A stretch of DNA of 64,000 nt, from assembly GCA_964247055.1 (NCBI GenBank), contig OZ176060.1, forward strand, positions 744,001 to 808,000. The letters are read 5' to 3'. Of this stretch, positions 7,601 to 62,900 are shown one piece after another. Positions within the stretch are counted from its first letter, which is position 1, and each line of letters opens with the position of its first letter. The stretch is from Paragordius varius. Taxonomy: Eukaryota; Animalia; Nematomorpha. The translations under genes and the position numbers were made by a program. Under the pieces are notes generated by a model that saw nothing but the letters and a program-made list of their open reading frames with translations, was not told the origin of the DNA and did not search any database.

Positions 7601-10600
7601 TAATATTTTTTTAATAAAAATTTTGGTTTATATAATATAAAAAAATAAATAAATTTTATAAAAAAAAGATATTTTATTAATATTTTTAATTATTTTAAAA
7701 ATTATAAAATATATCTTTATAATTATTTTTATTTTTTAATATTATTTTTTATAAAAAAATAATTAAAAATATTTTAATTTTAAATAATATAAATATTTTA
7801 TTTTAAAAAAAAAATTTTAAAAAATTTATTTAGTGTATAAAATTTTATAAATTAATGTTTTATTTTTTTTATAAAAATTATTTTTTATTTTTTTAAATTT
7901 ATATTTCTTATAGAATAATTATTTAAAATTTTAATTTAACTTTAATATTTTTATTTTTTAAAAAATTAAAAAAAATATATTAAAAAAAATAATATTTTAA
8001 TTTAAATATTTTTTAAAAATTATTAAAAAAATATTATTTTTATAAAAAATAACTATTATTTTTAAAAAATTACAAAAAATAAATATTTTTTATATTTTTT
8101 TAATAAAAAATAAAATTTTAATTAAAAATTTATATATTTTAATATTTAAAAAAAAAATTATTAAAAAAATATTTTTTTAAAAAATAATTAAAAAATTTTT
8201 TTTTAAATAATTTTTTTAGATTTGAAACTCAACCGTTCTCACCTGATTTATTATTGCCGAGATCAGCTGTTCCCTTAACTGCAAAAAGTGTTAAAAGGTG
8301 ATTTTAAATAATTTTTTTGAAATATTATTTTAAATTAAAAAAAAATTTTATTAAAATTAAATAATTTAATTACAATTTGATATTTATTTAAAAATTAAAT
8401 TATTTTATATATATATATTTATATAAAATTAAATATTTAAAAATAATATTAATTTTACTATTTAAAAAATAATTTTAATATTATTTTATTTATTATATTA
8501 AAATTTATTTAAAATATTATATATCTTTTAAAACAAAACTATAAAATATTTAAAATTTAAAATAATTTATTAGTTTATTAAAATAAAAAAATAATACATA
8601 ATATATATTTATCATTATTTATAAAATTAAATAATTAATTATATGTATTTAAATTAATTTTAAAAAAAAATTTAATTTTTTTCAATATTCTTAATTTTTT
8701 TGTATTTTTTATTTTTTTAATAATTTTTAATAATTTTATTAATTAATTAAAATTAAGTATATTTAAATATTATATCTTTTAAAAAACTTTAAATTTTTTT
8801 TGTTTTAATTTTATTTTTTTTATTTTTAATAATTTTTGGTAATATTATTAAATCAAATATTTTAATTTTAAACAAAAAGATAATTTTTAAAATAATTTTT
8901 TTTTAAATAATATAATTAATATTTTTTAAATTTTTTTTTTAATAGTTTTTTTAATTTTTTTTGTATTAATTTTATTTTTTAATTTTTTTGTTTTTGATAA
9001 TTTTTAAAATTTTTTTTATTATTTTAAAAAAATTTTTAAATGATTAATTTTAAAATTAAATATTTAAATTTTAAAAAAAAATTATATTTTTTATTATTTT
9101 TTTATTTTTTATTTTTTTTTATTATTTTAGAATAACCGCCCCCTTTAGACGTCAAATATTTACGACAACACCTGTTCGCCCAATCAGCTGTTTAATTTAA
9201 TATTTTTTATTTTTTTATTTTTTTAAAAATATTAATTTTTATAATTTAAATTATTTAAAAAATATTTTAAATTATAAATTATTAAAAACTTAAAAATATT
9301 GATTTTAAAAATATTTTAGAAATATATTTATTTTAATAAAAAAATTAATTTATAAAAATATAAATAAAATAAATTAAATTTAATTTAAAGGAATTAACTT
9401 TTTATTTTTTTAAATTATTTTTATTTCCTTAAAAAAATTATTAAATTTTAATAAAAAATAAAAAATATATTTTTTATTAAATAATTAAGTTTTAATTTTT
9501 TTTTAGTATTTTCTAGAAGAACTTTGCCATCTATACCAGGTTTTTATTTTTTTTTATTTTTTTTTAATTTTTTATATTATTTTTTAATTTTTTATAATTT
9601 TTTTTTATTTTTTATTATATATAAAAATATTTTTATTTTATATTTTTTTATTTTTTTATAAATAAATTATATTTTTATATTTTTTATATTTTTTTTTATT
9701 TTATTTAATTTTTTTATTATTTGTTTTATAAATTAAATAAATTATATTTTTTTTTATTCTTTGTATTTTTTATTTTACATATTTTTTTATTATTTTTTAT
9801 ATTGTTTTTTATTTAATATTTTTTTAATTAAATAATTTAATATTTTTTATATTTTTTGTATTTTTTATTATGTTATTTTTTTTATATTATTTTATTGTTT
9901 TTTTAAATATTTTTTTATTTAAATAATTTAATATTTTTTTAGTTTTTTAGGTAAAAAATGAAATTAAATAAATTATATTTTTTATTTTTTATATTTTTTA
10001 ATTATTTTATTTTTTATATTTTTTTATTTTTTGTAAAAAAAATTTATTTATTTATTTTTTTATTTAACTTATAATTTTATAAATATTTTTATTTAATTTA
10101 AAATTTTATAAAATATTTTATTTAATTTTTTTAAGATTATTAAATATTTATTTTTAATTACTATTTATAATTAAAATAAATTAAATAAATTATATTTTAT
10201 ATATTTTTTTGTATTTTTTTTATTTTTTTTAATTTTTTTTTATTTTTTTCTTTTATTAAAATTTGAAATATTTATATTTTGATTGATAAATTTTTATTAA
10301 TTAAATATTTAATATATTTGAATTTAATTATTTTTATTAATAATTATAAATAAAATTACTTTTAATTTATATTTTAAATAATAAAATAACAATTTTAATA
10401 TATTTTTATTAATAGTATAATTTCTAAAAATTTAAATTAATTAATTTATAAAATATTTTAATTAATTTATATTTTAAATAAAAAATAATTATTTTTTATT
10501 TAAAATCAGCTGTTAGATTAGAAACAGCTGGTTTTGGAAGTTCTAGAAGTTCGGCTGTTTTTACACGTGCCCGAGTTACAGGTAAAAAATAAAAACTAAA

Positions 10601-20402: not shown

Positions 20403-23400
20403 ATCGTCTGCTTCCACAATTTTAAATTCGTCTGCCCTTTTAAAATATAATTTAATTCAACTATCGTCTGCTTTACTAAAAATAATAACCACCTGTTGTT
20501 AAAAAATTAAAATTAGAAAATTAAATCATCTTCTGCTTTTTCTATATATTTTAAATCGTCTGCCCTTTTGAATAATTCAATTTAACTATCGTCTGCTTTT
20601 TGGTATATCGTCTTTTTTTATAATATTTTAGAAATTTATGATCGTCTGCATTTTTTATAGTAGATTTATAATCGTCTGCTGGTTTAGTAGGTAAATATAA
20701 TTTAAAAAATTATTTATCGTCTGATCTTATTATTGCTGTTCAGAATCTTATAATCGTCTGTTTTTTGTTTTTTCAGGAAATTACTTAATATTCAATCGTC
20801 TGCTTTTTGTATTTTAGTAAATCATCTATATATTTTAATCGTGTGCTTTGTTTAGCAATTTATTTATATATATTCTTCAGCTTTTTTAGGTAATTTAAAA
20901 ATTGATTTTTTGGGTTTTATATTTAATTATCGTCTGCCCTTTCTATGAATGAAAAATCGCCTGCTTTATTGTCTGCTGATTTTTTAAAGGTTAATTATCT
21001 AGAAATTTCGATTTGTCTGATTTTACCATATTATAATCGTCTGATGTTATGACATATAATCATCGTCTGCTTTTAGTATAAAAAGGTGAATATCAAAATG
21101 TTTATTTATAAAATTTTATATATCGTCTGCTTTATTATTGATTTTTGATTGTCTGCTATGTTATGACATCTAATTATCGTCTGCTTTTAGTATAAAATGG
21201 TTATTTTTTTAAATATTTTTTCATAAAATTTTGTATATCGTCTGCTATTTTCTATAAATTTAAAATCGTCTGATTTTTAAGGGTTATGCTGATTTATTAA
21301 AGGTTAATTTTCGTCTGCTTTTAGTTTAAAGATCGTCTGCTTTTATTTTAGTTTAAAATCTTTTACTGTTTTTAGTATTTTTAGATTAAGTACCATTTAA
21401 TTATCGTCTGCTCTTCCAATATATTATAATCGTCTGCTTTACTATAATTTATTGATCGTATGTGGATAAATATCGTCTGATTATACTTAGTTTAACAGCT
21501 GTTTTTATCACATTCGGTTTAACTACTTTTTAATTATTGTCTGCTAATTTTTTTTATTATCGTCTGCCAATTTTTTAAATAATTTTATCGTCTGCTGATT
21601 TTAGGATTCAATGAGAATTACCAATTTTTTTTAGATTTGTTTAATTTTTTTATGTTTTATTATAATTTATTTTTTTATAAAAAAATTTATTTATTTTAAT
21701 TAAATTTTACTTAAGTTTTTTATTTAAAAATTATTTTTTCTCTTAATTTAAAATATTTTTTTATATTAATTAATGTTTATATGTCATTTATTTCAGATTT
21801 TTTTCTATAATTGTCTTCTGCTGTTTTAAAAAAAAATACCTATCGTCTGCTTTTATTAATAATGTTTGATTGTCTCCTATTTGATGGTAATTTAATAGTT
21901 TGTTTGGGCAAATATATGTTTTTCTGATTATCATTTTCTTTTATTATGTTTATTGTCTGCTGATTTTTAAAAAGAAATATAACTATCGTCTGCTCTTACT
22001 AGAAATGTTCGATCGTCTTATTTTACTAGAAATGTTGGATCGTCTGCTCTTTTATGGTAATTAGATATTTATAATCATCTGCTTTTATTATGTTTTGATT
22101 GTCTGCTGATTTTTAAAAATGAAAATTAACTACCGTCTGCTTTTACTAGAAATATATGATCGTCTGCTATTTTATGCTAATTTAAATATTTAATAATCTG
22201 CTTTTCCTGTAATGAAACCGTCAGTTGATTTTTAAAAAATTAGTTTAGATTTTAATAATCATCTGTTTTTAGGAAAAATAATATTCATATCGTCTGCTAA
22301 TTTTTTAAAATATTTTATCATTAAAATTTAAAAATCGTCTGCTATGATGATAATTTAAATATTATTAATCATTTGCTTATATATTAAAATCATCCGTTGA
22401 TTCTCTAAAATAGGTTTAGATATTAATCATCATTTTTTTAAAAATTAATTCTTATCGTCTGCCAATTTTTAAATAAAATCAACTATCGGGCTCTCTTAAT
22501 ACATATTTATAATCGTCCGCTTTTTTAACAAATCATCTATTAATCAAATTATCGTTAGCTTTTACTCTAAATTTATAATCTTCTGATCTTTAGTTATCGT
22601 CTGCTTTTGGTCTTAATTTAGAATCTCTCATTATATAAATCGTCTGCTCATTTTCTACTTAAATTTAATTTGGATATTAAGTCTGCTTCCAAAAACATTG
22701 TAATTGTCTGCTTTTACTTAAGTTTTAAATTTCTGTTTTTAGGATATTTATTTAAAATATTTTTTAATTACGTTGTTATTTCTGGTACTTTAAGTATCGA
22801 CTGCTTGCTATTTTTATTTTTAGGTTTAATTATTATTAAATTATTGTTTCCTATTATTTTATGATCGTCTGTTTCAAGAAAATCAAGAATCGTCTGATTT
22901 TACTGTAGTTTAAATCATCACCTGATTTTTTAATTGATTTATCGTCTGCTATAGTCAGGCTATAAAAAATTTGTAATCGTCTGATTTTATTAAAAAACGA
23001 TTTTCTGTTTTTAGGATATTTGTTTTAATATTATTTAATTATCGTCTGCTTTTACTGTAATATGATCGTCTGATGAGTTTGATTATAGTTTGCTTACATA
23101 ATCATCTGCTTTTACTATTAATACAGTTTGCATATTTTAGCAGAAATATTTTAAAAATATCGTCTGCCTTAACTATATGTTTATTATCGTCTGCTAAATT
23201 TTTCAATTAATTTATCGTCTGCTGATTTTAGGTTAAATCTCAGGAAACCTCTGCACAATTTTTTACATTTGTTCAAATTTTGGATGTTTTAATTTTTATT
23301 AGTTTTTTAAATTAAATTGCTTATTTTAATTTATTTTTTTAATTTAATTTATATTTTGTATTTAAAAATTATTATTTCTTTTATTATATTTATTATATTT

Positions 23401-24627
23401 ATTATAGTTTTTTATGTGATTTATTTCAAATAAACCTATATCGTCTGCCATTTAATTTTAGATATCGTCTGCCTGATATTCACAAGTTCATTTATAATTT
23501 CGTCTGTTTTAGTAAACAACTCGAAAATTTATAATCGTCTGCCTTCACTTTAAAATGAAATTTTAAATTGTCTGCTTATATAAATATAATTACGAGTTTT
23601 ATCGTCTGCTATACAAGATATATTATCGTCTGCTTTTTTATATATATAACTCGTGTCATCTACTTTTCTATTTAAATAATTATCGTCTGCTATATATCAG
23701 TAAACAAGATTATATAAAATCGTCTGCTAATTATTTTTATTAGCATCGTCTGACATACATCAACAAATATTCGTCTGCTTCTTTACATTTATAAAATATA
23801 TTAATCGTCTGCCTCTAATCTATAAATTTCTAGAATCTATCGTCTGTTTTTACACCTTAAATTAATTAAAGTATCCGTTGTATTCGTCTGCCGTAATAAA
23901 ATCGTCTGCTATAAAAATGTTTTTATTGTCTGCCCAAATTATTTGAACTGTAATCGTCTGCTGATTTGATTTTAAATTATTTTATTATCGTTTGCCCTAA
24001 ATTATTTTGGGCAATATTATATATTTTCGTCTGCAGATTTTAATTTGATCTACTAATCGTCTGCCGATCCCACAAATCATATTTATCGTCTGCTCTGTTT
24101 TAAACAAATTTTTATTATATCATCTGATTTTTAACAAAAAGTCTATATTATAAATCGTCTGCCGATATTTACACATAATTATCGAATCTTCTGCTTTAAA
24201 TATATATTTTATTTATATCGTCTGCTTTAAAATATTCAATTTCTATCGTCTGCTAAGTGTTACAAAGTCCGTATTTTTTAATCGTCTGCTCTTGATATAA
24301 TTAAATTTATTGATATAAAATCGTCTGCGGCTTTTAAAAATTAAATTTATTGATTGAATATCGTCTGCTGTTATAAAAATTAAATTTATTGATATAATAA
24401 TCGTTAAAAATTAAATTTATTGATATAATAATCGTCTGCTGTTATAAAATTTTACTTTATTGGTATAATCGTCTGCTGTTAAAATTTTAAATTTATTGAT
24501 ATAATAATAATCGTCTGCGTCTTTTAAAAAATTTATTGATATAATAATCGTCTGCTCCTGATATAAGATTTATATCGTCTGCTTCTGATATAAAATAAAT
24601 AATCGTCTGCTCTTCATATAATCGTCC
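20403..24627 (+). promoter_or_regulatory. Strand-polarised array of ATCGTCTGC(T) motifs upstream of cyclin A copy 1
   Basis: On the order of 100 exact or one-mismatch copies (by eye), essentially all on the + strand, about 30-45 bp apart with variable AT spacers. The last (degenerate) copy lies 12 bp before the ATG at 24640. A regulatory role is inferred from position only. Confidence 0.65.
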
Positions 24628-24639
24628 AAACAAAGCATT

Positions 24640-27600
24640 ATGGATGAAAATTGTTATACTACTACAAATAATGCCAATGTATTAAAAATGGCGTCGGCAA
24701 AAAACATGTGTTTTAATGATGAAACAGCGACATTAAAACACCTGATGGGAGGAAAATCAGCTGATATCGAAAACAGCTGTTTTGCTCAAAAAGGTGTTAA
24801 TAAAAAACGTAAAGCTCTCGGCGCCATAGATGTTAACATAAACAATGTTGCTAATAATAAAAGTTATGTAACTATCAATAAAAGTTATGTAACTATCAAT
24901 AAAAATTATGTAACTATTAATGATAAAGAAAATAATGTAATTAACAATGAAAATTATGTAACCAATAATGATATTAATGTAAGTATTAATGAAGAAAATT
25001 ATGTAATTAATAATGAAGAAAAATTTGTAGTTAAAAACCGCGAATTTAATAATGATAATTTTAATGTAACTAATAATAAAAGTTATGTAATTAATAATAA
25101 AAATTATGTAACTAATAATAAAAGTTGTGTGGCTAATAATGAAAATTATGTGGCTATTAATGAAGGAAATAATGTTAATATCTATAATGAAAATTATGTA
25201 ACTATTAATGATGAAGAAAATTATGTAACTAATAATGAAGGGAAACAGAACGATGTTAGTATTATGGATTATTCTTTTAATGAATCTACAGCAAAAACAG
25301 CTGAAAAAGTTTATTCACAAAAAAGTAATTCGGAATCAAAAACAGCTGATTTTATTGGACTTGGAACAGCTGATGAAGGGTTAATAAATAGTTTTGGGAG
25401 AAAAACATCTGTTGAAAGGTTAAGAAAAAGTTCTGAAGTAAAAACATCAGTTGAAAGGTTAATAAAAAATGTTGATCCAGAAACAGCTGTTACCAATTTT
25501 CCGAAAACAGCTGACTATTTAAATAATTATGATGCAAAAACAGCTGATGAAAAAGATTATAAACTATCTGATGGAAGTTTTAAACAAAAAACAGCTGATT
25601 ATTTCTTTAATAGTTCAGAGGAGGAAAAAAGTAGTTTTGAAATAATATCAACAGCTGTTAAGAATGCCGAAAAGTGTTTTGGAACATCTGATGAAAAATC
25701 GTCATCAGGTGTTTCAATGACAATCTGCGAATCAGGTGATGTGACAAAAGTTGAACCATCAGCTGACAAAAATGTCATGGATATAAAAAGTTTGTTTTAA
25801 TTTTTTTAAAAAAAATTTTATTAAATTATTTTATAATAAAAAAGATTTTTATAATAAATATTATTTTTTAATAAATATTATTTTTATTTTAAAAATATAT
25901 ATATATTAATAAAACTAAAATATTTGCTGATTTTTAATTTTTTAAATGATTAATTATTTATTTTTGGTTAATATATTTATTTAATAATTATATATTTTTC
26001 AAATAAAATAATTTAATATTAATTAGACAGCTGTTTAATATTATTATGAATTTAATTATTTTTCATAATTTTACGTTAAATTGTTTATTTTACATATAAT
26101 ATTTAGTAAAATTATTAAATAAAAAATATATATATTATATAAAAAAATAATTTTTAAATTAAACAAAAATTTTATTACAGCTGATTTAGAGTTTATATTT
26201 TTATCTCTTAATAAAAATTAATTTTTAAATTAATCAAATAATTATGCAATTAATATATTTTAATTTATTTATATATATATATATAGTTTTCAAAAATAAT
26301 TTTAATTTTACTAACAGCTGGTTTAGTGAATGGCCCCGAAGCAGACGAAAAGTGTTCGCTCGAGCAGACGGTAACTTTGCTCGATATGTTTTGTATGCCG
26401 GAATATGTTTTGGATATTTTTCAGTTTTTAAAGAATATTGAAGTAAAAATATAAAATATTTATAAACTTTTTTAAATATATTAATTTTTTAAATAAATTT
26501 AATAAAAATGATTAAATTAAATTTAATATAAATTATTATTTTATTAATATTCAAAAATATTTTTTTAATTTAAAATTATTTTTTTAAATTTTTAGAATGA
26601 ACTAAGACCCAAACCCACTTACATGAGTAAACAACCAGACATAAGTCACGTGATGAGAAGCACAGTCATTGATTGGTTGGTTGAAGTGTCAGCTGAGTAT
26701 AAATTCAGCTGTCGCACACTTTACTGTGCGGTCGATATGATTGATAGGTTGTTAGAATGTTTTAAAATATTTGATATTTTTATTTTAAAAATTAATTTTA
26801 AATTTTTTTAAATTATTTTTTTTATTTTAAATATAATTTTATAAAAAATTACAACAAATTTAAAAAATTAATTATTTTAATATTTTTGAAATTAGAAATA
26901 AATTTTCTATTTTTTTTTTATATTGTATTAATATAATCACAAAACAATATATGTTTTTAAATAATTTAAAATCAATAAAAATTATTTTAAATAATTTAAT
27001 ATTATTTAAATTTAAGAAAATATGTTTTATAATTATGAAGTTTAAAAAATGAAAAATGAAAAATATTATATTTTAAATCAGCTGTCGCACACTTTACTGT
27101 GCGATCGATATGATTGATAAGTTAGCATTTGGAAGTCAAATTATCCTTGAATATTATAAATTATATTCATTTTAAATATATATTTTTTTTAAAAAATTTA
27201 TTTATTAATATTTATAAATTTTTTAGAAATATTATATTTTTTATAATATGTATTTTAAATATTTTTAACAAATTTATAAAATTATATTTTTAATGATTTA
27301 ATAAAACTATTTTATTTAAAAAAATAAATAATAGTATTCAAAAAAATATATTATTGTTTTTAAATTTTTAAATAATTATTTTTTTGATTTTATTAATAGA
27401 CATTATAAATTAATTTTAATAAATTTGTTTATTAAATAAATTAATTATAGTATAAAAAAATAAATAAATTTTTTTATTATAATAATTTTTAAATAAAATA
27501 TTTTTTATAATTTTATATAAATTTTAAATTTAATTATTTTTTTAAGTTTATTTATTTATATTTGTAATTTTTTTTATTTTAGATTTTTATCACTAATGGC

Positions 27601-30060
27601 AGTTAGTCGGGGGAAATTACAGCTGTTGGCAACAAGCGCTCTATATATAGCGGCGTATTTATTTTTATTTAATTTATTTTTATTTTAAAAAAAATTTATA
27701 TTTTTTGTAAAAATATATAAAATAAAATTTAAATTTAATTTTTATTTATATGATAAAAAAATTAAATAAAATTATAAAATTTTTTAAAATAAAATTTACT
27801 TTTGATTTTAAATAATTTTTTATTATATTTTAATAAGATATTAAATTTTAAAAATTTATTATATTTATATTTTAATAAATTTAATATTTTTATTATATTA
27901 AAATAATTAAATTTTTTATCATAAAATAATATAATTTCATACATTTTTATAAATTATAAATATATTTTTTTAATAAATTTTTTTATTTTTAATAATAATT
28001 TTATTTTTCTAAAAAATTAAGAAATATAAATTTGAATATTTTAATAAATTTATTTTATTAATTATAATAAAATAAAAAAATTTACCAAAAATTTTTATAA
28101 ATAATTTATTTTACAATTTTAATTTTTTTTATAATTAAAGAAAAGATTATTTTTGTAAAATATTAATTATATATATTTATTTATTGAAAAATTAAATTAA
28201 AAATTTTAATTTTTCAAAAAATTCGAAGAATTTTACTCATCAGATATCAATTTTTTATATTCAAAAAATAATAATAACATCTAAAAAAATAATTAATTCC
28301 TAATAATTTTTAGGGAATTTCGAAATAATATATATAATATTTATAATATAATAAAATAATTTGTTTTATGTATTTTTTTTTAAAAAAAATTTAATTTTCT
28401 ACAAAATTCGAAGAAATATATAAAAAATTTTATATATTGATTTTAATATTTTTATAATTTTTTTTTTAATTTTTAATTTGTGATAAATAATATAAATGAT
28501 ATTTTTTAATTTTTGAAAGATATTTTAATTAAAATATTTTTTTATAATTTAAAATTTTTAAAAAAAAATATACTGAAAAATATAATAAAATTTTTTAAAA
28601 AATTTTAATTTTCTAGAAAATTCGAAGAAATTTACCCCCCTGATATAAATGAATTTGTTAATTTTAAATAAAAAATATTAAAATAAAATTTTTGTAATTT
28701 TTAAATTTTAGAGAAAATAAATTTATTTTTATTTTTAAATTAATAGACAAATTTAATTATTAATTTGTTTATTTTTTTAAATTTTTAAAGAATAAAATAA
28801 ATTTATTTTTATTTTTAAATCAAATAATTTTTTAATTCCCAAAAATATTTTCAATTTTTCTAGAAAATTCGAAGAAATATACCCGCCTGATATAAATGAA
28901 TTTGTTTACATAACTGACAACACATATTCACGCGAACATGTGATTAGGATGGAACAGCTGATTCTCAAAGTTTTACATTTCCGGGTTGGTACATCAGCTG
29001 TTACGAGTGACTGGTTAGATGCATGCGTGCGAATTATGTTTACAAACCAAAAATCAGGTAATCTAAGAAATTTGAAAGGATATTTATGTTAATAAATATT
29101 AAATTTAGACTTAAAATAATTATTTTTTTACTAAAAAAATATATTTTTTAAAATAATTTAAATAGTTCTCATAAATATATGTAATTTTTTTATATAAAAT
29201 TTATACAAACTATATAAATCTGGTTAAATGCATGCGTGCGAATGGTGTTTTGATAGAAATTTTAATTTTTAAATAAATTTAATTTTTTCAGAAAATCAAT
29301 ATAGAATATTTAAATATTTAGAAATATTTATTAAAAAATAATTTTATAAAAATATTATAAATGACAGGTTAGATGCATGCGTGCAAATTATGTTTACAAG
29401 CCAAAAATCAGGTGTTTTATAATTTAAAAAGATATTTAAAAATTTTGAGTTTTTAATAAAAAAATAATTGATTTAAATAAAAAATAAAATATTTAGTTGA
29501 AATTATTTTAAGTTATAAATATAAATTTTTTTAAGTAAATATTATTATAAAGAAGAACTGGTTAGATGCATGCGTGCGAATCATGTTAAAAATTAAAAAA
29601 TCAGGTGTTTTAAATAAGAAAATTTTATAAAGATATATTTGATTTTATAATAATAGAATTTGAAAAATATTTATTAAATCATTTTTAATAGTCCTCTAAT
29701 ATAATTTAATTTTAAAAGACTGGTTAGATGCATGCGTACAAATTATGTTTATAGGCCAAAATCAGGTGTTTTATGTTTTTCAAAAAAAATAATTTTTTAG
29801 ATATTAAATCGTTTTTGATAACAATCAAAAATATGTCTATTTTGTGAAAAAATTGAAATTTTTTTATTTTTCATAAATTCGATCCTATCTGATTTTAAAT
29901 TCGAAATAAAAAAAATGTGTAATGACTAGATGCATGCGTGCGAATTTAGTTTAACAGGCAAAAATCAGGTGTTTATGATTGTTATTTTTATTCATTCATT
30001 CATTTATCAGGTGATGGCAAGTTGACAGCTGTTCAAAGGAAAGTACACTATTTAGCAAAA
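24640..30060 (+). CDS. CycA: Cyclin A, copy 1; exons 1-6 only (3'-truncated by duplication breakpoint, possibly the 5' half of a chimera)
   Basis: Exons 24640-25789, 26318-26442, 26596-26747, 27583-27654, 28864-29057, 30011-30060 (581 codons, open). D-box-like [10 protein letters not shown]. Cyclin box [30 protein letters not shown]...[39 protein letters not shown]...MEQLILKVL. Exons 7-10 of the second copy are absent downstream. Confidence 0.85.
27077..29975 (+). repeat. Intronic reiterations of cyclin A exon ends with splice sites (copy 1)
   Basis: Exon 3 end plus donor at about 27077. Exon 5 acceptor plus 5' end at about 28219, 28403 and 28612. Exon 5 3' end at about 29219, 29362, 29557, 29718 and 29923 (gactggttagatgcatgcgtgcgaattatgtttac...aaaaatcag|gtg), most retaining the donor. 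Confidence 0.85.
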
Positions 30061-30812
30061 GTATCAAATAATTGTTTTATAAAATTAATATATTTTAATC
30101 ATCTGTTTTAAATATTTTTTTATTTAAAATAATATATTTTATTAAAACAATATAAATATTTTTTTTATTAATTGTAATTTTTCATAAATAAAAACTAAAC
30201 ATCTGGTTCATATTTATGAATCACCTGTTTTTATTGTAAGAAATCATGAGCAACAGCTGATCACAAGATTTTATGGTGATTTGTCAGTTATATTAAAGGA
30301 AAAAAATTAAGATTTCCGTAAAATTTAAAAACAGCTGTTTTTTTAAAAAATACAACATTATGTTTATTTTATATTTTTAGGTATTAAAAATTATAAATAT
30401 ATATATTTACATATATTATCAATATTATAATTAAATATATATGAAAAATAAAAAAATTATTAAATTAAAAAATTTAATATTTGTTTATTAAACAAATATA
30501 ATTTAATATTTTCAAATTATATTATCAATATATAAAGTTACTTATTTTTTAATTTAAAATTATTAAACATATATTTTACTAAAATAAATAAATATATATA
30601 AATATTTTTTTAACCATTAAAAGTAAATTATATTAATTATATATTTTTAAAATAAAATTATCTTATAAAAATTATTTTTCAAAAAATTATATTTAATAAT
30701 TAACAAATAAATAATTTTCAAATTATATATATTCTATTAATAATATATAAATATATTTTTAGATTATTATCAAAATAAAAAATATATCAATTTATTCTTA
30801 TATTTATCATAG

Positions 30813-51350: not shown

Positions 51351-54300
51351 ATCGTCTGCTGTTTAAATAAAATTAAATTATCGTCTTTCCTAAAAATCAT
51401 AATCGTCTGCTGTAAGAAAATCTAATTATCATCTGCTTTTGGTATAAAAATAATACTGATTTTTTTTTAAAAAATATAATTTAACATTTGAATATCGTCT
51501 GCTCTTTAAGAATCATATTTTAAAAATTTATGATCATCTGCTTTTTCTATAGTAGATTTATAATCGTCTGCTCTTTTTTAGGAATTATAATCCAAAAACT
51601 TAATCGTCTGCTTCTAGAAAATTAAAATCGTATGCCCTTTATTATGGAATAAAATTTAAAAAGATATGATCTGCTTTATTAAAAATTATAATCACCTTAA
51701 TTATTTTAAAAAAATTAATTAAATTATCGTCTTCTTTTGGTATAAATTTATAATCGTCTGCTCTTTTTTATGAAATATAGTTTAAAAAGTTATGATCGTC
51801 TGCTGGTTTTTAGGTAAATATAATTTTATAAATTGTTCTTACTACTGCTGTTTTTCTGGTAAAGATTCCTATGATCGTCTGCTTTTTGTATTTTGGTAAT
51901 TTGTCAATATAATCGTCTTTTTTTTTAGAAAATTATCATATTTTAATTGTCTGCCATTATTAGGTAATTTAAAAATTACCGATTTTATGGGTTTTAATTA
52001 AATTATCGTGTGCTGATTTTTAATGTTTAATTATTTAAAATTTCTATTTGTCAGATTATACCATATTATAATCGTCTGCTGTTATGAAATCTAATTATCG
52101 TCTGCTTTTAGTATAAAATGGTTATTTTATTGTTTTAATTTTAAAATTTTATATATCGTCTGTTTTATTTTATAAATTTATAATCATCTGCTGATTAAGG
52201 TTAATTACCAAATTCCTAGTTTAATTTTACCATAAATTTATAATCGTCTGTTGTTATGACTTATCGTCTGTTTTAAGTATAAAATGGTGATTTTTTGTAA
52301 GATTTGATTTTAAAATTACCATATCGTCTGCTTTTTTTCCATAAATTTAAAATCGTCTGACCTTTTGAATATTTCACTTAAACTATCGTCTGCTTTTTGG
52401 TATAAATATATAATCGTCATTTTTTATTATAGCTATAAATTTATGATCGTCTGCTTTTTCTATTAAAAATTTATAATCGTCCGCTAGTTTTTTAGGTAAA
52501 TATAATTTAATTATATTATCGTCTCTCTTTCCTATAAATTTCTAATCGTCTGCTGTTTTTTTTGGAAATATATAGAAATTTAATTATCATCTGCTTTTAG
52601 TAACGATTTATAATCGTATGCTCTTTTTTTAGGTAAGATATATTTAAAAATTTAACTATCGTCTGCTTTTGGTATAGATTTATGATCGTCTGCTTTTTTA
52701 AGAAATATATTTTAAAAATTTAATTATTGCCTGCAAATATAATTTACGAAATAACTATCGTCTGCTTTTTGGCATATTTAATCGTCTGCTGTTTTTTAGG
52801 TAAATAATTTAAAAAATATTTATCGTATGATCTTACTATTGCTATTTATATTTTTATAATCGTCCGTTTTTTGTTTATTATAATATTGTCAATATGTTTT
52901 ATTCGTCTGCTTTCTGTTTTTTTGCAAATCATCTATATATTTTAATCGTGTGCTTTTTATATTTTGGTAAATTATCTATATATAATTGCATTTTTAAATT
53001 AATTTATAAATGTTGCTTTTATGGGTTTTGATAATATAATTATCGTCTGCTCTTCCTATAAACAAATCCTCGTCTGATTTTACAATACAATTATGATTGC
53101 CTGCCTGTTTTTAAATGTTAATTACCAACAAATTTCTAGTTTGATTTTACCATAAATTTATAATCGTCTGTTGTTATGACATCTAATTATCGTCTGCTTC
53201 TAATATTAAATGGTGATTTTTTGTAAGGTTTGATTTTAAATTTACCATATCGTCTGCTTTTTTTCCATAAATCGTCTGCTGATTTTTAAGGGTTATGCTG
53301 ATTTATTAAAGGTTAATTATCGTCTGCTTTTAGTTTAAAGTTTTATATATCGTCTGCTTTTACTTTAGTTTAAAATCTTTTACTGTTTTTAGTATTTTTA
53401 GTTTAAGTACTATTAAATTATCGCCTGCTTTTCCTATATTTTATCGTCTGCTCTTACTATAATTTCATGATCGTATATGGATAAGTATCGTCTGATTTTA
53501 CTATAGTTTAACAGCTGTTTTTATGATATTCAGTTTAACTACTTTTTAATTATTGTCCGCTATTAATTAATTATCGTCTGCCTTTTTAAATAATTTTATC
53601 GTCTGCTCATTTTAGGATTCATTGAGAATCGTTTGTACAATTTTTTTATATTTGTTTTAATTTTTTATGTCTTATAATTTATTTTTTTATTTTAAAATTT
53701 ATTTATTTTAATTTTAATTTTAAGTTTCTTATTAAAAATTATTTTTCTTTTATTATATTTATTAAAAATTATTTTTTTATATTAATTAATGTTTATATGT
53801 CATTTATTTCAGATTTTTTAATATCGTCTGTCAATTTTAGATATCGTCTGTCAGATATTCACAAGATGATTTATATTTTCGTCTGCTTTAGTAAGCAACT
53901 CGAAAATTTATAATCGTCTGCCTCGCTCTTTAAAATCAAATTTTAAATTTGTCTGCTTATATAGATATACTTACTAATTTTTATAATCGTCTGCCATACC
54001 AACAAGAAATATAATCGTCTGCTTTTTATTTATAACTCCTGTCATCTACTCTTATTAAAATTTTAATTATCGTCTGCCACATATCAGCAAACAAGATTTT
54101 GTAATCGAGATTCATCTGCTATTTATTTTATCAGCTTCGTCTAACATATATCATCAAATATTCGTCTGCTTTTTAATCTTTAAAATATAACATTCGTCTG
54201 CCTTTATATTATTTTTTTTAATCTATCGTCTGCTTTACACCTTAAATTAATTAATAAAAAATATCCGTAGTATTCGTCTGCCGTTAAAATATCTTAAAAA

Positions 54301-54984
54301 TCGTCTGCTATAAAAATGTTTTTATCGTCTGCCCAAATTTTATTTAAACTCTAATCGTCTGCTGATTTTCTTCACCTCTATATTTTTTAATCGTCTGCTG
54401 TTTAATTTATAATTATTTTATCGTCTACCCTAAATTTTGGGCTATATTAGAGTTTCGTCTGCAGATTTCAATTTGATCTTTTAATCGTCTGCCGATCTCT
54501 TAAACTATATTTAATATATCGTCTGCTCTGTTTTACACAAATCACTATTAGATAATCTGATTTTTAACAAAAAGTTTATAATTATAAATCGTCTGCTCAA
54601 ATATATATATATATAATATATTTATCGTCTGCTGATATAAACATTTAATTAATTTATATAATACTGCTGTTATAATTTATATCCCATTTATATCGTCTGC
54701 TCCTGATATAAAAATCCATATTTTTTAATCGTCTGCTGGTATAAAAATTTAATATTTTAATAATAATCGTCTGCGGCTTCTAAAAATTTATTTTATTGAT
54801 ATATTAATCGTCTGCTGTTATAAAATTTTACTTTATTGGTATAATCGTCTGCTGTTAAAATTTAAAATTTATTGATATAATAATCGTCTGCTCTTATTTA
54901 TATTCCATTTATATCGTATGCGGCTTTTAAAAATTAAAATTATTGATATATAATAATCGTCTGCTCATTATATAATCGTCTGCT
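51351..54984 (+). promoter_or_regulatory. Strand-polarised ATCGTCTGC(T) array upstream of cyclin A copy 2
   Basis: On the order of 100 copies by eye, same orientation, ending 23 bp before the ATG at 55008. Blocks are colinear with the 20403-24627 array but spacers have diverged. Confidence 0.65.
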
Positions 54985-55007: not shown

Positions 55008-56911
55008 ATGGATGAAAATGCCAATGTATTAAAAATGGCGGCGGCGGCGGCAAAAAACATGTGTTTTAATGATGAAACGGCGACATTAAAACACCTGATG
55101 GGAGGAAAATCAGCTGATGGCGAAAACAGCTGCTTTGCTCAAAAAGGTGTTAATAAAAAACGTAAAGCTCTCGGCGCCATAGATGTTAACATAAACAATG
55201 TTGCTAATAATAATAAAAGTTATGTAACTAATAATAAAAATTATGTGGCTAACAATGAAAATTGTGTAACTAATAATGAAGGAAATAATGCTAATATCTA
55301 TAAAAATTATGAAACTATCAATGATGATATTAATGTAACTAATAATAAAAATTCTATAATTAATAATAAAAATTATGTGGCTAATAATGAAAATTATGTG
55401 GCTATCAATGAAGGAAGTAATGTTAATATCTATAATGAAAATTATGTGACTATCAATGAAAGTTCTGATAATAAGAATTATGTAAATATCAATGAAGAAA
55501 ATTATGTAACTATTAATGAAAATAATAATGTTAATATCTTTAAAAATGAAAAAAGTTATGTAATTATCAATAAAAATTATGTAACTAATAATGAAAATTA
55601 CGTATCTATCAATGATGAAGAAAATTATGTAACTAATGATGAGGAAAATATTAATGTAACTAATAATGAGGCAAAACTGAACGATGTTAGTATTATGGAT
55701 TATTCTTTTAATGATTCTACAATGGAAAAAAGTTCTGAGGAAAAAACAGCTGATTTTATTAGGCTTGAAACAGCTGATGATTTACAAAAATGTTTTAAAA
55801 CAAAAACAACAGCTGATGAAAGGTTAATAAAAAGTTCTGAAGTAAAAACAGCTGTTACAAATTTTGATCTGAAAACAGCTGACGATTTAAATCACTTTGA
55901 TGCAAAAACAGCTGATGAAAGTTTTGAAGGCTCAGCTGATGCGAGTTTTAAACAAAAAACAGCTGATTATTATTTTAATAGTTCAAAGGAGGAAAAAAGC
56001 AGTTTTGAACTAAAATCAACAGCTGTTAAAAATACCGAAAAGTGTTTTTTTGAAACATCTGATGAAAAATCGTCATCAGGTGTTTCAATGACAATTTGCG
56101 AATCAGGTGATGTGACAAAAGTTGAACCATCAGCTGATAAAAATGTCATGGATATAAAAAGTTTGTTTTCATTTTTTATGAAAAATTTAAAATAAATAAA
56201 ATTTTATAATAAATAAGATTTTTTTATAATAAATATTATTTATAATAAATATTATTTTTATTTTAAATTTATGTATTTTAGAGAATAACAGCTGATTTTT
56301 ATTTTAAAATAACTGTTTAATTTATTAAATTGTTTATTTATTTTATATTTTTCAATTAAATTAAGTTTAATATTATCTTGAAATTAATTATTTTTCTAAA
56401 TTTTTTTGTTAAATATTACATTTATTTTATGTATTTTTTAAACTATTATATATAATTTAAATACATTTTTTTATATAAATCAAATATTTATACAATTAAT
56501 AAATTTAAATTATTTATATTATATATTTTCCATAAATTGATTTTAATTTTTTTACTAACAGCTGATTTAAGGTTTTATTTTTTCTCAGTTGATTTAAAAG
56601 TTTTTTTTTAATTTTAGATTAAAAAATATATTAATTATATATTTATAATTAGTTTATATTAAATAAGAAAAATTAATTAATATTAATTTTATTATTTTAT
56701 TTTTTTTACTAACAGCTGATTTAGTGAATGGCCCCGAAGCAGACGACGCGTTGTCGCTCGAGCAGACGGTAACTTTGCTCGATATGTTTTGTATGCCGGA
56801 ATATGTTTTGGATATCTTTCAATTTTTAAAGAATATTGAAGTAAAAAAAAATTTTATTTAAAAATATTTTAAAATAAAATTAAAATTTAATAAAAATATT
56901 ATAATAATTAT

Positions 56912-56965
<54 letters not shown>

Positions 56966-59900: not shown

Positions 59901-62900
59901 ATCAGGTGATGGGAAATTGACAGCTGTTCAAAGGAAAGTACACTATTTAGCAAAAGTATATAATTTAAAATATATTTTAAATTAAATAAATTTTTTATAA
60001 TTAAAACAAAAATTGTTTCTTATAAAAATAAAATTTTTATGTTAAAAAATATATTCTTATTTTATTCCTGTTTTAAATATTTTTTTATTCAAATAATATA
60101 TTTAATTAAAATAAATTAATTATAATTACTTATTTTTTTTATTAATTGTAATTTTTCATCAATAAAAAATCAATAAATTATTTTTAGATATATAAAAAAG
60201 CGATTTTTTGAAATTAATAAATATTTTTTTTAAATTATTAAAGCGATTTTTTGAAATCAATAATATTTTTGAGAAAATACATTTTTTAATCAGCTGTTAT
60301 AAAAAATTTATTTTAAATAAAATAAATTTAAATTATAAAAAAATATTTTAATTTATCCTTTTTTGACATAATATTTTTTAGCATTGCAATTAAATTATAA
60401 AAAAAAACTTGATATTTAAATAATTAAATAATAATAATAAATTAATATATTTGAAAGAAAATATTTTTTTGTTATCATAATTTTTTTTTACAAAATTTAT
60501 ATATATATTATTTAAAATTTAAAAATAATTTATATTTATTTAAATCAGCTGTTTTCATTATTTTTACAATTTTTTTAGTATTTATGCGAATTGTGTTTAC
60601 TGGAAGGCGAAACTTTTTTGTTCTTTGAACCGAGCAGACAAGTATCAGCTGTTTTATGTCTGGCGAACCTAACACTCAAACGCGAACCATATGTTTGATT
60701 TAATTTATTTTAAAAAAATTCTAAAATATTTTTTAAATATATATATATATATATTATAAATTATTTATTTTTAAAAAAATTATATATTCTTAAAATTTTC
60801 CTTTTGAAATTAATAAATATAGGTTAGGTTTTCTAGAAAAATTACATTTGAAAAAAATTAATTAACAAAAAGTTAATTAATTTCAAAAAAAATTTTTTAC
60901 AACAAAAATATTTTTTTATATATATTAAACTTATATTATTATAGTATTATAAAAAATAAAAAAAATTATTTTTTTAAATATAAAGCTGTTTTATCTCTGG
61001 CAAACCTAACCCTAAAGAGAGAACCATATGTTTGATTTAATTTTAAATATTTTAATGTTTTTGAATCATATATATAATTAAAATTTATTTTCATTATTAT
61101 AAATTATATATATATATATATATATATTTAGTTATTTAATTCTTAAAAAGGTTATATATTTTTAAAAAATTTCCATTTTAAAATTTTTTATATCTTAAAA
61201 ATATATAATTATTTTTATTTAATATATATAAAACATAATGTTAATTAAAAATAATAATTTTTTTATATATATTTTAAAATTATTATATTTTTATATTTAT
61301 AAGTTTTTATATTTTATAAATAAATAAAATTATTTTTAAAAATAAAGCTGGTTTATATCTGATTAACCCTAAATCTTAAGAGGGAACCATATATTTGATT
61401 TAATATTAATTTAATTTTACGAATAATTGTTAGAAATAATATTAATTTTTTAATTTTTTAATAACCCTTTAAAAAAAATAATATAAATAAATCAAAATTA
61501 TAAATAAATAAAAATTATAAATATTTTAAAATTATATATATATATATTTTATTTAATAAAATTTAAAAATAAATATTGAAAAATATCAAAAATATTTTAT
61601 ATTACATTAAAATTATTATATTACATATATAAAAATTATTTTTTAAAAATATTTAATTAATTTAAATTATTTTTTAGGAACCAATCCTAGAAAAAATAAC
61701 GGGATTTTCCTATAAAGATTTTCTCAGCTGTTTGCAAGCTTTATACGCCACGCAATGTAAATATTATCAGCTGTGCTGTAATCATATGGTAATTATTTTT
61801 TAATTTTAAAATACTTAATTTTTTTATTTAATTAAAATATCTATTTGATAAAATAATTAGTTTATTCATTAAAAATATTAAAATTTTTTAAATTTATTAA
61901 AAAAAAATATCAGCTTAGTCATATGGCTGATATTTAAATTTTTCCTATAATTTTTATTTTAAATAATAATAAATTATTTTATATTTTTAATTTTTTAACA
62001 AAAATTCTATCAGCTGTCCTGCCATATGGTTATTAGCATTATTTATTTTATTAAAAAGTATTTATTTATTTAAATAAATTTATAATTTTTTTTTAAAATA
62101 AAATAATATATCAATAATATAAATTATCAGCTGTAATAAATATTTTTTTATTTATAACATCAATTTTATTAAAATTCCTTTTTAAATAAGATAATTTAAT
62201 ATAATATTTTAATTTTTATATAATATTTAAATAAATAAATTATATTAATTTAATTTTTTATATTATTTATGTTTTAGGAATCCAAATCAACTGATAGTGG
62301 AAAACAACAGCTGTTTAAAGCCGTTTGGGAAAAATATTCTGCAATTGGGTTTTTATTAAATTAAATAATTTATTTTCTAACTATTTTTAAAATTAAAAAA
62401 TATTTTTATATATTAGGTTTATAATTAAATTTTTAGAAAAAATATTTTTCCATATTTTATTGATAATTTTGTAAAATATCAGCTGCTTTGATCAAATGAA
62501 AATAGTTTATTTTTCAAAAATCAGCTGTTTTAATATAAAAATTTAATTAAAATTAAAAATAAAAAATTATTTTATAAATAATATTACCAAATATATAGAG
62601 AGAAAAATTTAAATATTATTAAATATTTCAATTGTTTGTTTAATGATTTTTTATTAAAAAATAATATTTTATGTTTTGGTAATTATTCTTTTATATTTTT
62701 TTACTTAAAATTATATAGAATATAAAATAAAATTTAATTTTATTTCAAAACAGCTGTATAAAAAAAATTTATTTAAATAATAATACATTAACTAATTCTT
62801 ATATTAATATTAAAAAATATTTATTTAATTTATTTTATTTTTAATAGTTTTTTATTAAACAGCTGTAATTATAATTTTATTCTAAATTAATTTAGTATTT

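What the first reader, a model, noticed from the sequence alone, without database searches (positions are those of the whole stretch)
20403..24627. About 4-kb unidirectional array of roughly 100 ATCGTCTGC motifs running up to the cyclin A start codon
Seen: a 9-10 bp core repeats every ~30-45 bp, all on one strand, with non-repetitive AT spacers, so it is not a classical satellite. Copies become more exact and regular toward the ATG. The motif is essentially absent in this orientation elsewhere in the window. Established: GTCTG/CAGAC is the Smad-binding element, TATCG/CGATA is the BEAF-32/DREF half-site, and DREF regulates Drosophila cyclin A. Inference: an unusually large homotypic cluster (super-enhancer or promoter array), or, given the strict polarity, an RNA-level element in a very long 5' leader controlling cyclin A translation or localisation.
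Basis: partly seen in the sequence, partly recalled or inferred. Interest (0 to 1): 0.82.

Follow-up and report, generated by a model that had tools for sequence, protein, structure and literature searches.

The report
One-way DNA-word arrays flanking genes
In an extremely AT-rich animal genome, a nine-letter DNA word (ATCGTCTGC) is stacked 10 to 100 times, always on one strand, beside cyclin A and three other housekeeping genes at a single duplicated locus. The word is kept while the DNA between copies decays, so something most likely reads it, probably a DNA-binding protein.

Summary
The array is real. Window 20403-24627 holds 55 exact, 89 (≤1 mismatch) or 105 (≤2 mismatches) forward copies of ATCGTCTGC and none in reverse. 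It ends 29 bp before the start codon of a gene whose cyclin-box exons match cyclin A2.

Genome-wide there are 14 such arrays (577 copies forward, 0 reverse within arrays). All lie in two paralogous regions of contigs C10 and C11.

The arrays sit on the 5' side or the 3' side of cyclin A, an ERp44-like gene, eIF5A and eIF1. Five or six unrelated spacer families share only the word. Between paralogous arrays the word's G/C positions are kept 88-97%, against 62-84% for spacer G/C.

This favours a selected DNA-level binding-site array (a landing pad, boundary or enhancer). It argues against a cyclin-specific 5' leader RNA element, a Smad/DREF site or a neutral minisatellite.

No RNA or cross-species data could be obtained, so the function is inferred. 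The scan noted the same word arrays on other DNA of this genome (s1-252988, s1-273720).

The parts
20403..24627 (+). Array 1: 55 exact / 89 (≤1 mismatch) / 105 (≤2 mismatches) copies of ATCGTCTGC, all forward. Three blocks (20403-21595, 21842-23222, 23440-24610) are separated by two motif-free AT-rich gaps.
24640..25800 (+). Exon 1 of cyclin A copy 1: a 386-aa open frame, Asn-rich, with nine in-frame CAGCTG words. No Pfam family and no homologue found for this exon alone.
26321..26449 (+). Cyclin A copy 1 exon 2. It carries two copies of the word on the opposite strand (26341, 26364), 23 bp apart. The pair is conserved in copy 2 (56739, 56762). The C10 locus L007 also holds two minus-strand cores, and its exon-2 homologue lies at 9245-9364.
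26596..26757 (+). Cyclin-box exon (Cyclin_N, E = 2.8e-15; best solved match cyclin A2).
28862..29062 (+). Cyclin-box exon (Cyclin_N, E = 1.2e-12; best solved match cyclin A2). It is the last recognisable exon of copy 1, and partial copies of it follow in the intron.
51351..54983 (+). Array 2, paralogous to array 1 (74% identical in aligned columns): 48 exact / 76 (≤1 mismatch) copies, all forward.
55008..56195 (+). Exon 1 of cyclin A copy 2 (395 aa).
61678..62361 (+). C-terminal exons of cyclin A copy 2 (61678-61755 and 62278-62361). They are present in the C10 copy and absent from copy 1. An antisense array (L009 202-714, which is C11:808202-808714) starts about 1.8 kb further on, just beyond the window's end.

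Best explanation
The arrays are DNA-level landing pads: stacks of 10 to 100 binding sites for one sequence-specific, probably monomeric, DNA-binding protein that reads the asymmetric word [A/T]TCGTCTGC[T/C].

Each array grew by tandem duplication of a unit holding one site, and that alone explains the strict one-strand polarity. Selection then kept the sites while the spacers drifted. The arrays sit at the borders of a few gene islands (cyclin A, ERp44-like, eIF5A, eIF1) that lie in DNA deserts of 3-7% G+C.

My preferred reading is that the bound protein marks or insulates these gene borders, as a boundary or barrier, or as a high-valency enhancer/promoter for the arrays that abut a start codon.

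Shown: the anatomy, the restriction to one duplicated locus, the polarity, and conservation of the word above its spacers. Inferred: that a protein reads the word, and what the binding achieves.
For: (1) Only about 10 positions carry information. The core TCGTCTG is invariant by the way copies were collected, but the flanks at -2/-1 and +6/+7 are also fixed, and nothing beyond them is shared across 488 copies from 15 array segments.
(2) Five or six spacer families have no detectable similarity to each other yet carry the same word.
(3) In alignments of paralogous arrays, restricted to columns anchored by ≥70% identical flanks, the word's G/C positions are kept 88-97% against 62-84% for spacer G/C. 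Fisher p ranges from 1.6e-9 to 1.3e-3 in five of six comparisons (unrestricted version). Copies are positionally homologous across three cyclin arrays.
(4) Array count is 577 forward and 0 reverse. There is a spacing floor of about 23-24 bp and a mode of 24-32 bp, as expected if each site needs its own footprint.
(5) Arrays occur only at C10:3.25-3.43 Mb and C11:0.76-1.05 Mb, plus two small duplicate contigs.
(6) Arrays lie on either side of genes, and 6 of 7 ancestral arrays point into the neighbouring gene. This fits a DNA element better than a sense-RNA element.
(7) There is no RNA structure and no Rfam match.
(8) Spacers hold 15-18% G+C against 5.5% in the neighbouring deserts, and the word contains the only regular CpG in the region.
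Against: Conservation was measured between paralogues inside one genome. Aligners tend to pair G/C-rich words, so the contrast may be inflated despite the anchoring filter. Gene conversion among units cannot be excluded.

The inward orientation (6 of 7) is not significant (one-sided p about 0.06). The number of independent ancestral arrays is small, at six to eight. No known factor's matrix was matched.

Cyclin copy 1, the gene behind the array in question, lacks its last exons, so at least this array may serve a crippled gene.
Confidence: 0.5

Rival explanations
1. RNA-level element. The arrays are transcribed and the word acts in RNA, in one of three ways: as a repeated protein- or RNA-binding site in a long cyclin A leader; as independent transcripts running into the genes from both sides, where sense plus antisense would give double-stranded RNA; or as small-RNA mini-units comparable to nematode piRNA clusters.
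For: The last copies lie 25-35 bp from the cyclin A ATG in all three paralogues, so the 5' UTR almost certainly contains at least one copy in sense. Spacers are T-rich on the motif strand in every array (T 0.44-0.50 against A 0.31-0.41), which could reflect transcription-linked asymmetry. Restriction to two genomic clusters and unit sizes of 24-32 nt recall small-RNA loci.
Against: Arrays 3' of eIF1, eIF5A, the ERp44-like gene and cyclin A copy 2, and the array 5' of eIF5A, are antisense to the gene, so a sense leader function cannot be general. The proximal 300 nt fold worse than 199 of 200 shuffles, and there is no Rfam family. No conserved base lies at a fixed distance downstream of the word, as a small-RNA 5' end would require. 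No RNA run holds the stretch, though that is weak evidence.
Confidence: 0.17
2. Neutral, decaying minisatellite family that spread locally by segmental and tandem duplication. On this view the word persists by chance, youth or homogenisation, and has no function.
For: Tandem Repeats Finder finds local tandem periods. The whole region has been duplicated repeatedly: a 30.4-kb tandem duplication and the C10/C11 paralogy. Some arrays share spacer families (L004/L005, L010, L009 minus-strand array, L003). Arrays occur at one ancestral locus only.
Against: The word is kept well above spacer G/C and spacer A/T in anchored paralogous alignments, in a genome whose unconstrained DNA has fallen to about 5% G+C. 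Homogenisation would carry spacers along with the word, yet five or six spacer families share nothing but the word.
Confidence: 0.1
3. Arms of Foldback-like transposons.
For: The ERp44-like gene is bracketed by convergent arrays in both paralogous regions (L004/L005 with L006; L009 plus-strand array with L010). Cyclin A copy 2 is bracketed by array 2 and the L009 minus-strand array. Foldback arms are known to consist of short tandem repeats (my knowledge). Head-to-head pairs of the word occur in a dispersed repeat family (L136, L140, L144).
Against: The two arms around the ERp44-like gene share no spacer similarity. Arrays 1 and L007 have no partner, and the eIF5A arrays are in tandem rather than inverted. 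There is no dispersal: all arrays sit in one duplicated locus. The arrays in front of cyclin A end 25-35 bp from the ATG in three old paralogues, so they must contain the promoter or 5' UTR. Host-level conservation of the word is not expected of dead transposon arms.
Confidence: 0.1
4. Oriented (polar) barrier in the strict sense. The bound arrays would stop a tracking machine (RNA polymerase, replication fork or a loop-extruding complex) from one direction only. Inward-pointing pairs would then delimit gene domains, as convergent CTCF sites or oriented TTF-I/Reb1 terminator arrays do. This is a sub-case of the best explanation, listed separately because it makes orientation functional.
For: Six of seven ancestral arrays point into the adjacent gene, on either the 5' or the 3' side. 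The ERp44-like gene and cyclin A copy 2 are bracketed by convergent arrays. Polarity within arrays is strict.
Against: Polarity within an array follows automatically from tandem duplication. Six of seven is not significant. The eIF5A upstream array points away from the gene in both paralogues. The word bears no resemblance to the CTCF core (my knowledge).
Confidence: 0.2

Closest known systems
Homotypic clusters of transcription-factor binding sites in animal enhancers and promoters
   Same: Many copies of one short asymmetric motif lie next to genes, and the motif is conserved above the surrounding sequence.
   Different: Known clusters hold a handful to about ten sites per kb, in mixed orientation, genome-wide, for a known factor. 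Here there are 10-105 sites per array with strict polarity, a single duplicated locus and an unknown reader. The arrays also lie on the 3' side of genes.
Insulator or boundary site arrays (gypsy su(Hw) 12-site array, BEAF-32 CGATA clusters in scs', clustered or convergent CTCF sites, DXZ4 and Firre CTCF tandem arrays)
   Same: Repeated sites for one protein sit at the edges of gene domains. Orientation matters for CTCF. Two genes here are bracketed by convergent arrays.
   Different: The word matches none of those motifs. The DRE and BEAF contexts were tested and are absent. No chromatin-contact data exist, and one array pair is not convergent.
Oriented terminator and fork-barrier arrays (mouse rDNA Sal-box/TTF-I repeats, fission-yeast Reb1 and RTS1 repeats)
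   Same: Direct repeats of a short protein-binding word lie just beyond the 3' ends of transcription units and act in one direction.
   Different: Those arrays have 2-10 copies at rDNA or the mating-type locus. Here there are tens of copies at Pol II housekeeping genes, and also on the 5' side.
Foldback (FB) transposons
   Same: Long arms are built from short tandem repeats in inverted orientation around a central segment that can carry genes.
   Different: The arms here are not homologous to each other, several arrays have no partner, and the family is not dispersed.
Nematode piRNA clusters with the Ruby motif
   Same: A short strand-specific upstream word is repeated hundreds of times and confined to two genomic regions.
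   Different: No conserved 5' base lies at a fixed distance, units of 24-32 bp are too short for motif plus spacer plus small RNA, and no small-RNA data exist.
The AWCAGCTGWT word that saturates exons in this same genome (earlier notes s1-285143, s1-252888 and others)
   Same: It is a ten-letter G/C-core word, hugely over-represented in an AT-saturated genome, and it shares 7 of 10 letters with ATCGTCTGCT. The two words occupy complementary territories at this locus: gene bodies for CAGCTG, gene flanks for ATCGTCTGC.
   Different: CAGCTG is a palindrome, occurs genome-wide and lies inside coding sequence. ATCGTCTGC is asymmetric, non-coding and confined to one duplicated locus.

Membership tests
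Homotypic transcription-factor binding-site cluster | Many copies of one short motif within a few kb, far above chance | tested here: met
   170 matches in the window against 0.48 expected; 577 copies in 14 arrays.
Homotypic transcription-factor binding-site cluster | Motif conserved above flanking sequence | tested here: met
   Between paralogous arrays, motif G/C is kept 88-97% against 62-84% for spacer G/C. Orthologues could not be obtained.
Homotypic transcription-factor binding-site cluster | Occupancy by a factor and regulatory activity | not testable with these tools
   No ChIP, ATAC or reporter data.
   0 TATCGATA and 0 GTCTAGAC in the array. CGATA and GTCTG occur only as parts of the longer invariant word, and the T at -3 is present in only about half of copies.
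Classical satellite / minisatellite | Head-to-tail copies of one unit of constant length, with the whole unit similar | tested here: inconclusive
   Local periods of 27-120 bp at 65-85% matches. However, spacing ranges from 18 to 255 bp, and five or six spacer families share only the word.
Foldback-like transposon | Two inverted arms that are homologous to each other | tested here: not met
   No similarity between L004/L005 and L006, or between L010 and the L009 plus-strand array, beyond the word.
Foldback-like transposon | Multiple dispersed copies, target-site duplications, a transposase | tested here: not met
   All arrays lie in one duplicated locus. Target-site duplications and a transposase were not examined.
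CTCF-type oriented boundary | Convergent orientation of sites at the two ends of a domain | tested here: inconclusive
   The ERp44-like gene (both paralogues) and cyclin A copy 2 are bracketed by convergent arrays. The eIF5A arrays are in tandem. Overall 6 of 7 point inward, p about 0.06.
CTCF-type oriented boundary | CTCF core motif; loop anchors in contact maps | not testable with these tools
   By my knowledge the word does not resemble the CTCF core. No contact maps are available.
Nematode-type piRNA cluster | Conserved small-RNA 5' base at a fixed distance from the upstream motif | tested here: not met
   No information content beyond +13 from the core.
Structured RNA leader or known RNA family | Stable or conserved secondary structure, or an Rfam match | tested here: not met
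   z = +2.6, with 199 of 200 shuffles folding at least as well. The only hit is a chance-level miRNA match inside the exon.

The most novel reading that the evidence does not exclude
This genome uses a two-word DNA marking system. The palindrome AWCAGCTGWT would be written through the bodies of chosen genes. The related asymmetric word ATCGTCTGCT would be stacked in oriented arrays at the borders of a few of them. Paralogous readers would recognise the two words and together define and insulate active gene domains in a sea of 95% A+T DNA. The inward-pointing arrays would then be a CTCF-independent, orientation-dependent boundary invented in this lineage.
Probability: 0.15. Interest if true: 0.88.

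Novelty: new variant of a known kind. Interest (0 to 1): 0.64.

Why it matters
In most animal genomes regulatory words are hidden in neutral sequence. Here the background has decayed to about 5% G+C, so whatever is read and selected stands out directly.

The arrays hold 10-100 strictly oriented, selectively kept copies of one word. They are confined to one duplicated locus and flank core proliferation and translation genes. This makes them a natural 'operator array' with an unknown reader.

It could reveal a lineage-specific boundary or activator system, and it would bear on the still unexplained CAGCTG saturation of exons in the same genome.

Tried and rejected
Alignments and BLAST in scripts had the stretch masked with N or started beyond it, simple local motif counts read the unmasked window, and the tandem-repeat and Rfam calls were run beside it.

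2. Protein route to orthologues. The cyclin exon-1 frame found nothing in the large protein collection. A blank there says nothing about longer or shorter kin.

3. Metagenome scan for triple-word patterns. It gave 120+ hits, but all are regular tandem repeats, many with periods that are multiples of three, in DNA of 31-66% G+C. They are unrelated to these arrays.

4. Literature. No paper holds the word in a relevant sense.

5. Dispersed single copies. The 10-mer occurs 575 times genome-wide against 40 for a permuted 10-mer, and about 240 of the 575 are in arrays. Of 20 sampled places, all lie in DNA of 25-37% G+C, and several belong to repeat families or long transposon-like frames, with no shared flank. 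I therefore do not claim functional single sites.

6. The tool's built-in control (the pattern read backwards) is not independent here, because TCGTCTGCT reads the same backwards. Its control counts partly re-count the arrays.

7. Helical phasing of spacings. There is no clean 10-11 bp periodicity. The peaks at 28 and 31 bp are inflated by recently duplicated units.

8. Organism identity. Earlier notes guess a horsehair worm. I verified only that the gene is a cyclin A, hence an animal. Published hairworm genomes are 200-300 Mb against 110 Mb here, so the guess stays open.
Full report
WHAT IS THERE

The window is 12% G+C overall. It has 15-kb 'deserts' of 3-7% G+C and small G+C-richer islands.

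Between 20403 and 24627 the + strand carries ATCGTCTGC 55 times exactly, 89 times at ≤1 mismatch and 105 times at ≤2 mismatches. The - strand carries none. Dinucleotide-preserving shuffles of the window give 0.48 matches at ≤1 mismatch against 170 observed.

The array has three blocks (20403-21595, 21842-23222, 23440-24610) separated by two motif-free gaps. The last exact copy ends 29 bp before the ATG at 24640.

The open frame that follows (386 aa) has no Pfam family. The next exons are Cyclin_N (E = 2.8e-15 and 1.2e-12), and both match cyclin A2 far better than cyclin B1 or E1. The gene is therefore a cyclin A and the organism an animal.

The hexamer core CGTCTG occurs 136 times on the + strand of the window: 73 in the reported array and 63 in a second array at 51351-54983. 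The second array sits in front of a second cyclin A exon 1 at 55008-56195.

A self-comparison shows a tandem segmental duplication of about 30.4 kb, 73-85% identical. Copy 1 of the gene, the one behind the reported array, lacks the two C-terminal exons. These exons are present in copy 2 (61678-61755, 62278-62361) and in a third copy on contig C10.

GENOME-WIDE PICTURE

The window is C11:744001-808000 of a 110.6-Mb assembly. Three pattern scans of the whole assembly find arrays of the word only at C10:3.25-3.43 Mb and C11:0.76-1.05 Mb, plus two small contigs (C32, C40) that duplicate parts of these. I fetched the loci and counted 14 arrays of 0.5-4.3 kb. Together they hold 577 copies at ≤1 mismatch, all in the array's own orientation, and none reversed.

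The neighbouring genes were identified exon by exon:
- cyclin A, three copies;
- an ERp44-like thioredoxin-fold gene, two copies;
- eIF5A, two copies;
- eIF1/SUI1, one copy.

The two regions are rearranged paralogues of one ancestral locus. The number of independent ancestral arrays is therefore about six to eight.

POSITION AND ORIENTATION

- Cyclin A: the array is on the 5' side, in sense, ending 25-35 bp from the ATG in all three copies.
- Cyclin A copy 2: a short antisense array also lies about 1.8 kb beyond its last recognised exon (L009 202-714).
- ERp44-like gene: a sense array lies about 2 kb upstream of the first recognisable exon, and an antisense array lies beyond the 3' end, in both paralogues.
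- eIF1: an antisense array starts about 160 bp after the stop codon.
- eIF5A: an antisense array lies about 0.8 kb beyond the 3' end. A second array 0.4 kb upstream of the start codon is also antisense, so it points away from the gene, in both paralogues.

Six of seven ancestral arrays therefore point into the adjacent gene. This is suggestive but not significant (one-sided binomial p about 0.06). The arrays are not a feature of gene starts, and they are not specific to cyclin A.

THE WORD

A profile of 488 core-containing copies shows information only at [A/T]-T-C-G-T-C-T-G-C-[T/C], followed by a weakly T-rich stretch of about six bases. Nothing further out is shared across arrays.

Among one-mismatch copies, the first and ninth letters vary most, while letters 2, 7 and 8 almost never vary. 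The CpG decays mainly by transitions.

Start-to-start spacing has a sharp floor at 23-24 bp and a mode of 24-32 bp. Spacers are T-rich on the word's strand in every array, and they hold 15-18% G+C against 5.5% in the deserts.

IS THE WORD SELECTED?

The proximal 1.2 kb of the three cyclin arrays align with clear positional homology of individual copies. Over the whole arrays, the word's G/C positions (defined in one paralogue) are kept in both others 74-81% of the time, against 41-47% for spacer G/C. The word's A/T positions are kept 91-93%, against 67% for spacer A/T.

Aligners like to pair G/C-rich words. I therefore repeated the test using only columns whose flanks (word columns excluded) are ≥70% identical with few gaps. 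I applied it to six paralogous pairs, including the ERp44 and eIF5A arrays. The word's G/C positions are kept 88-97% against 62-84% for spacer G/C. Five of six comparisons are significant (p from 1.6e-9 to 1.3e-3).

Independently, an all-against-all comparison shows five or six spacer families that share no similarity except the word.

The caveat is that these are paralogues in one genome, not orthologues.

WHAT IT IS PROBABLY NOT

Smad or DREF sites: the array has no TATCGATA and no GTCTAGAC, and the invariant part is longer than a Smad contact.

A structured leader RNA: the last 300 nt fold worse than 199 of 200 shuffles (z = +2.6), and Rfam gives nothing. A sense-RNA function also cannot explain the antisense arrays beside other genes. 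Even so, at least the last one or two copies must lie in, or immediately before, the cyclin A 5' UTR.

A plain minisatellite: local tandem periods exist, and tandem duplication is surely how the arrays grew. That also makes the strict polarity unremarkable in itself. Neutral decay or whole-unit homogenisation, however, does not explain word-only conservation.

However, the arms are not homologous to each other, several arrays have no partner, the family is not dispersed, and the cyclin arrays must contain the promoter.

MOST LIKELY MECHANISM

A sequence-specific, probably monomeric, DNA-binding protein reads the asymmetric 9-10-bp word. Arrays of tens of sites concentrate it at the borders of a few gene islands. 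I cannot distinguish between a boundary or barrier role and a high-valency enhancer/promoter role.

Several points favour a boundary: placement on either side of genes, the mostly inward orientation, and the location at the transition from desert to gene. Two points favour a promoter-proximal role for the cyclin arrays: the 25-35-bp distance to the ATG, and the 92-100% exactness of the proximal copies.

The anatomy and the conservation are shown. The reader protein and the effect of binding are inferred.

RELATION TO THE OTHER WORD OF THIS GENOME

CAGCTG is the commonest G/C-rich hexamer of the window, with 202 copies. Earlier notes of this scan describe AWCAGCTGWT saturating exons genome-wide.

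At this locus the two words have complementary territories. Array 1 contains a single CAGCTG, while cyclin exon 1 contains nine, all in the same reading frame. ATCGTCTGCT and ATCAGCTGAT share 7 of 10 letters. This is a post hoc observation, but it suggests related readers.

LIMITS

No expression, binding or orthologue data could be obtained. I worked beside them and sent none of their letters to any search tool afterwards.

The dispersed single copies of the 10-mer are 575 in total, about 240 of them in arrays, against 40 for a permuted control. Where sampled, they sit in repeat families and G+C-normal DNA, and I make no claim for them.

The backwards-read control of the genome search is compromised, because TCGTCTGCT is a mirror repeat.

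VERDICT

This is a real, statistically overwhelming and selectively maintained set of oriented word arrays. I file it as a new variant of homotypic binding-site, boundary-type arrays with an unknown reader. Interest 0.64.

Noticed in passing
window 24640-25800, and the whole window: CAGCTG is the commonest G/C-rich hexamer in the window (202 copies). Nine copies lie in cyclin exon 1 between 25298 and 25760, all in one reading frame, where they encode T-A-D/V or S-A-D ('KTAD'). Several more sit a few bases before 3' splice sites, in the form CAGCTGNTTTAG.
   Followed up: partly
window 24640-30300, compared with 55008-62361 and L007/L008: Cyclin A copy 1 lacks the two C-terminal exons that copy 2 and the C10 copy have. 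It looks like a 3'-truncated product of the 30.4-kb tandem duplication. Its exon 1 frame is still open and its cyclin-box exons are 98-100% identical in protein to those of copy 2.
   Followed up: partly
window 26341-26372 and 56739-56770; L007 exon 2 homologue at 9245-9364: Two copies of the word on the opposite strand, 23 bp apart (the array's minimum spacing), lie inside coding exon 2 of cyclin A copies 1 and 2. They are the only reverse-strand cores in the window. L007 also holds two reverse-strand cores, but their position within exon 2 was not checked.
   Followed up: no
the word itself: TCGTCTGCT reads the same backwards (a mirror repeat, not a reverse-complement palindrome). As a result, the genome search' 'pattern read backwards' control partly re-counts the arrays.
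   Followed up: yes
L136 1001-1029, L140, L144 (contig C1): Head-to-head pairs GCAGACGA-(about 10-12 bp)-ATCGTCTGC occur in a small dispersed repeat family in G+C-normal DNA. Other single copies lie in long transposon-like open frames (L142, L145) or in another repeat family (L148, L150).
   Followed up: partly
   Followed up: no
L004 227-4900, L011 2600-9900, L012 1-1650, L015 5400-10000: A long satellite lies between the arrays. It is made of AAT/ATT-type runs interrupted by a conserved G/C-containing unit of about 120 bp, and it gives spurious long open frames in all six frames.
   Followed up: no
L001 5800-9999, L002 1-422, L013 6100-9650: The eIF5A genes are full of partial exon copies and CAGCTG words (25 and 24 copies per 10 kb).
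   Followed up: no
contig C32 (18.6 kb) and C40: These small contigs repeat, base for base over the matched stretches, arrays of C10:3349123 and C11:850592. C32 joins the two within 12 kb. They are probably alternative haplotype or assembly versions of the locus.
   Followed up: no
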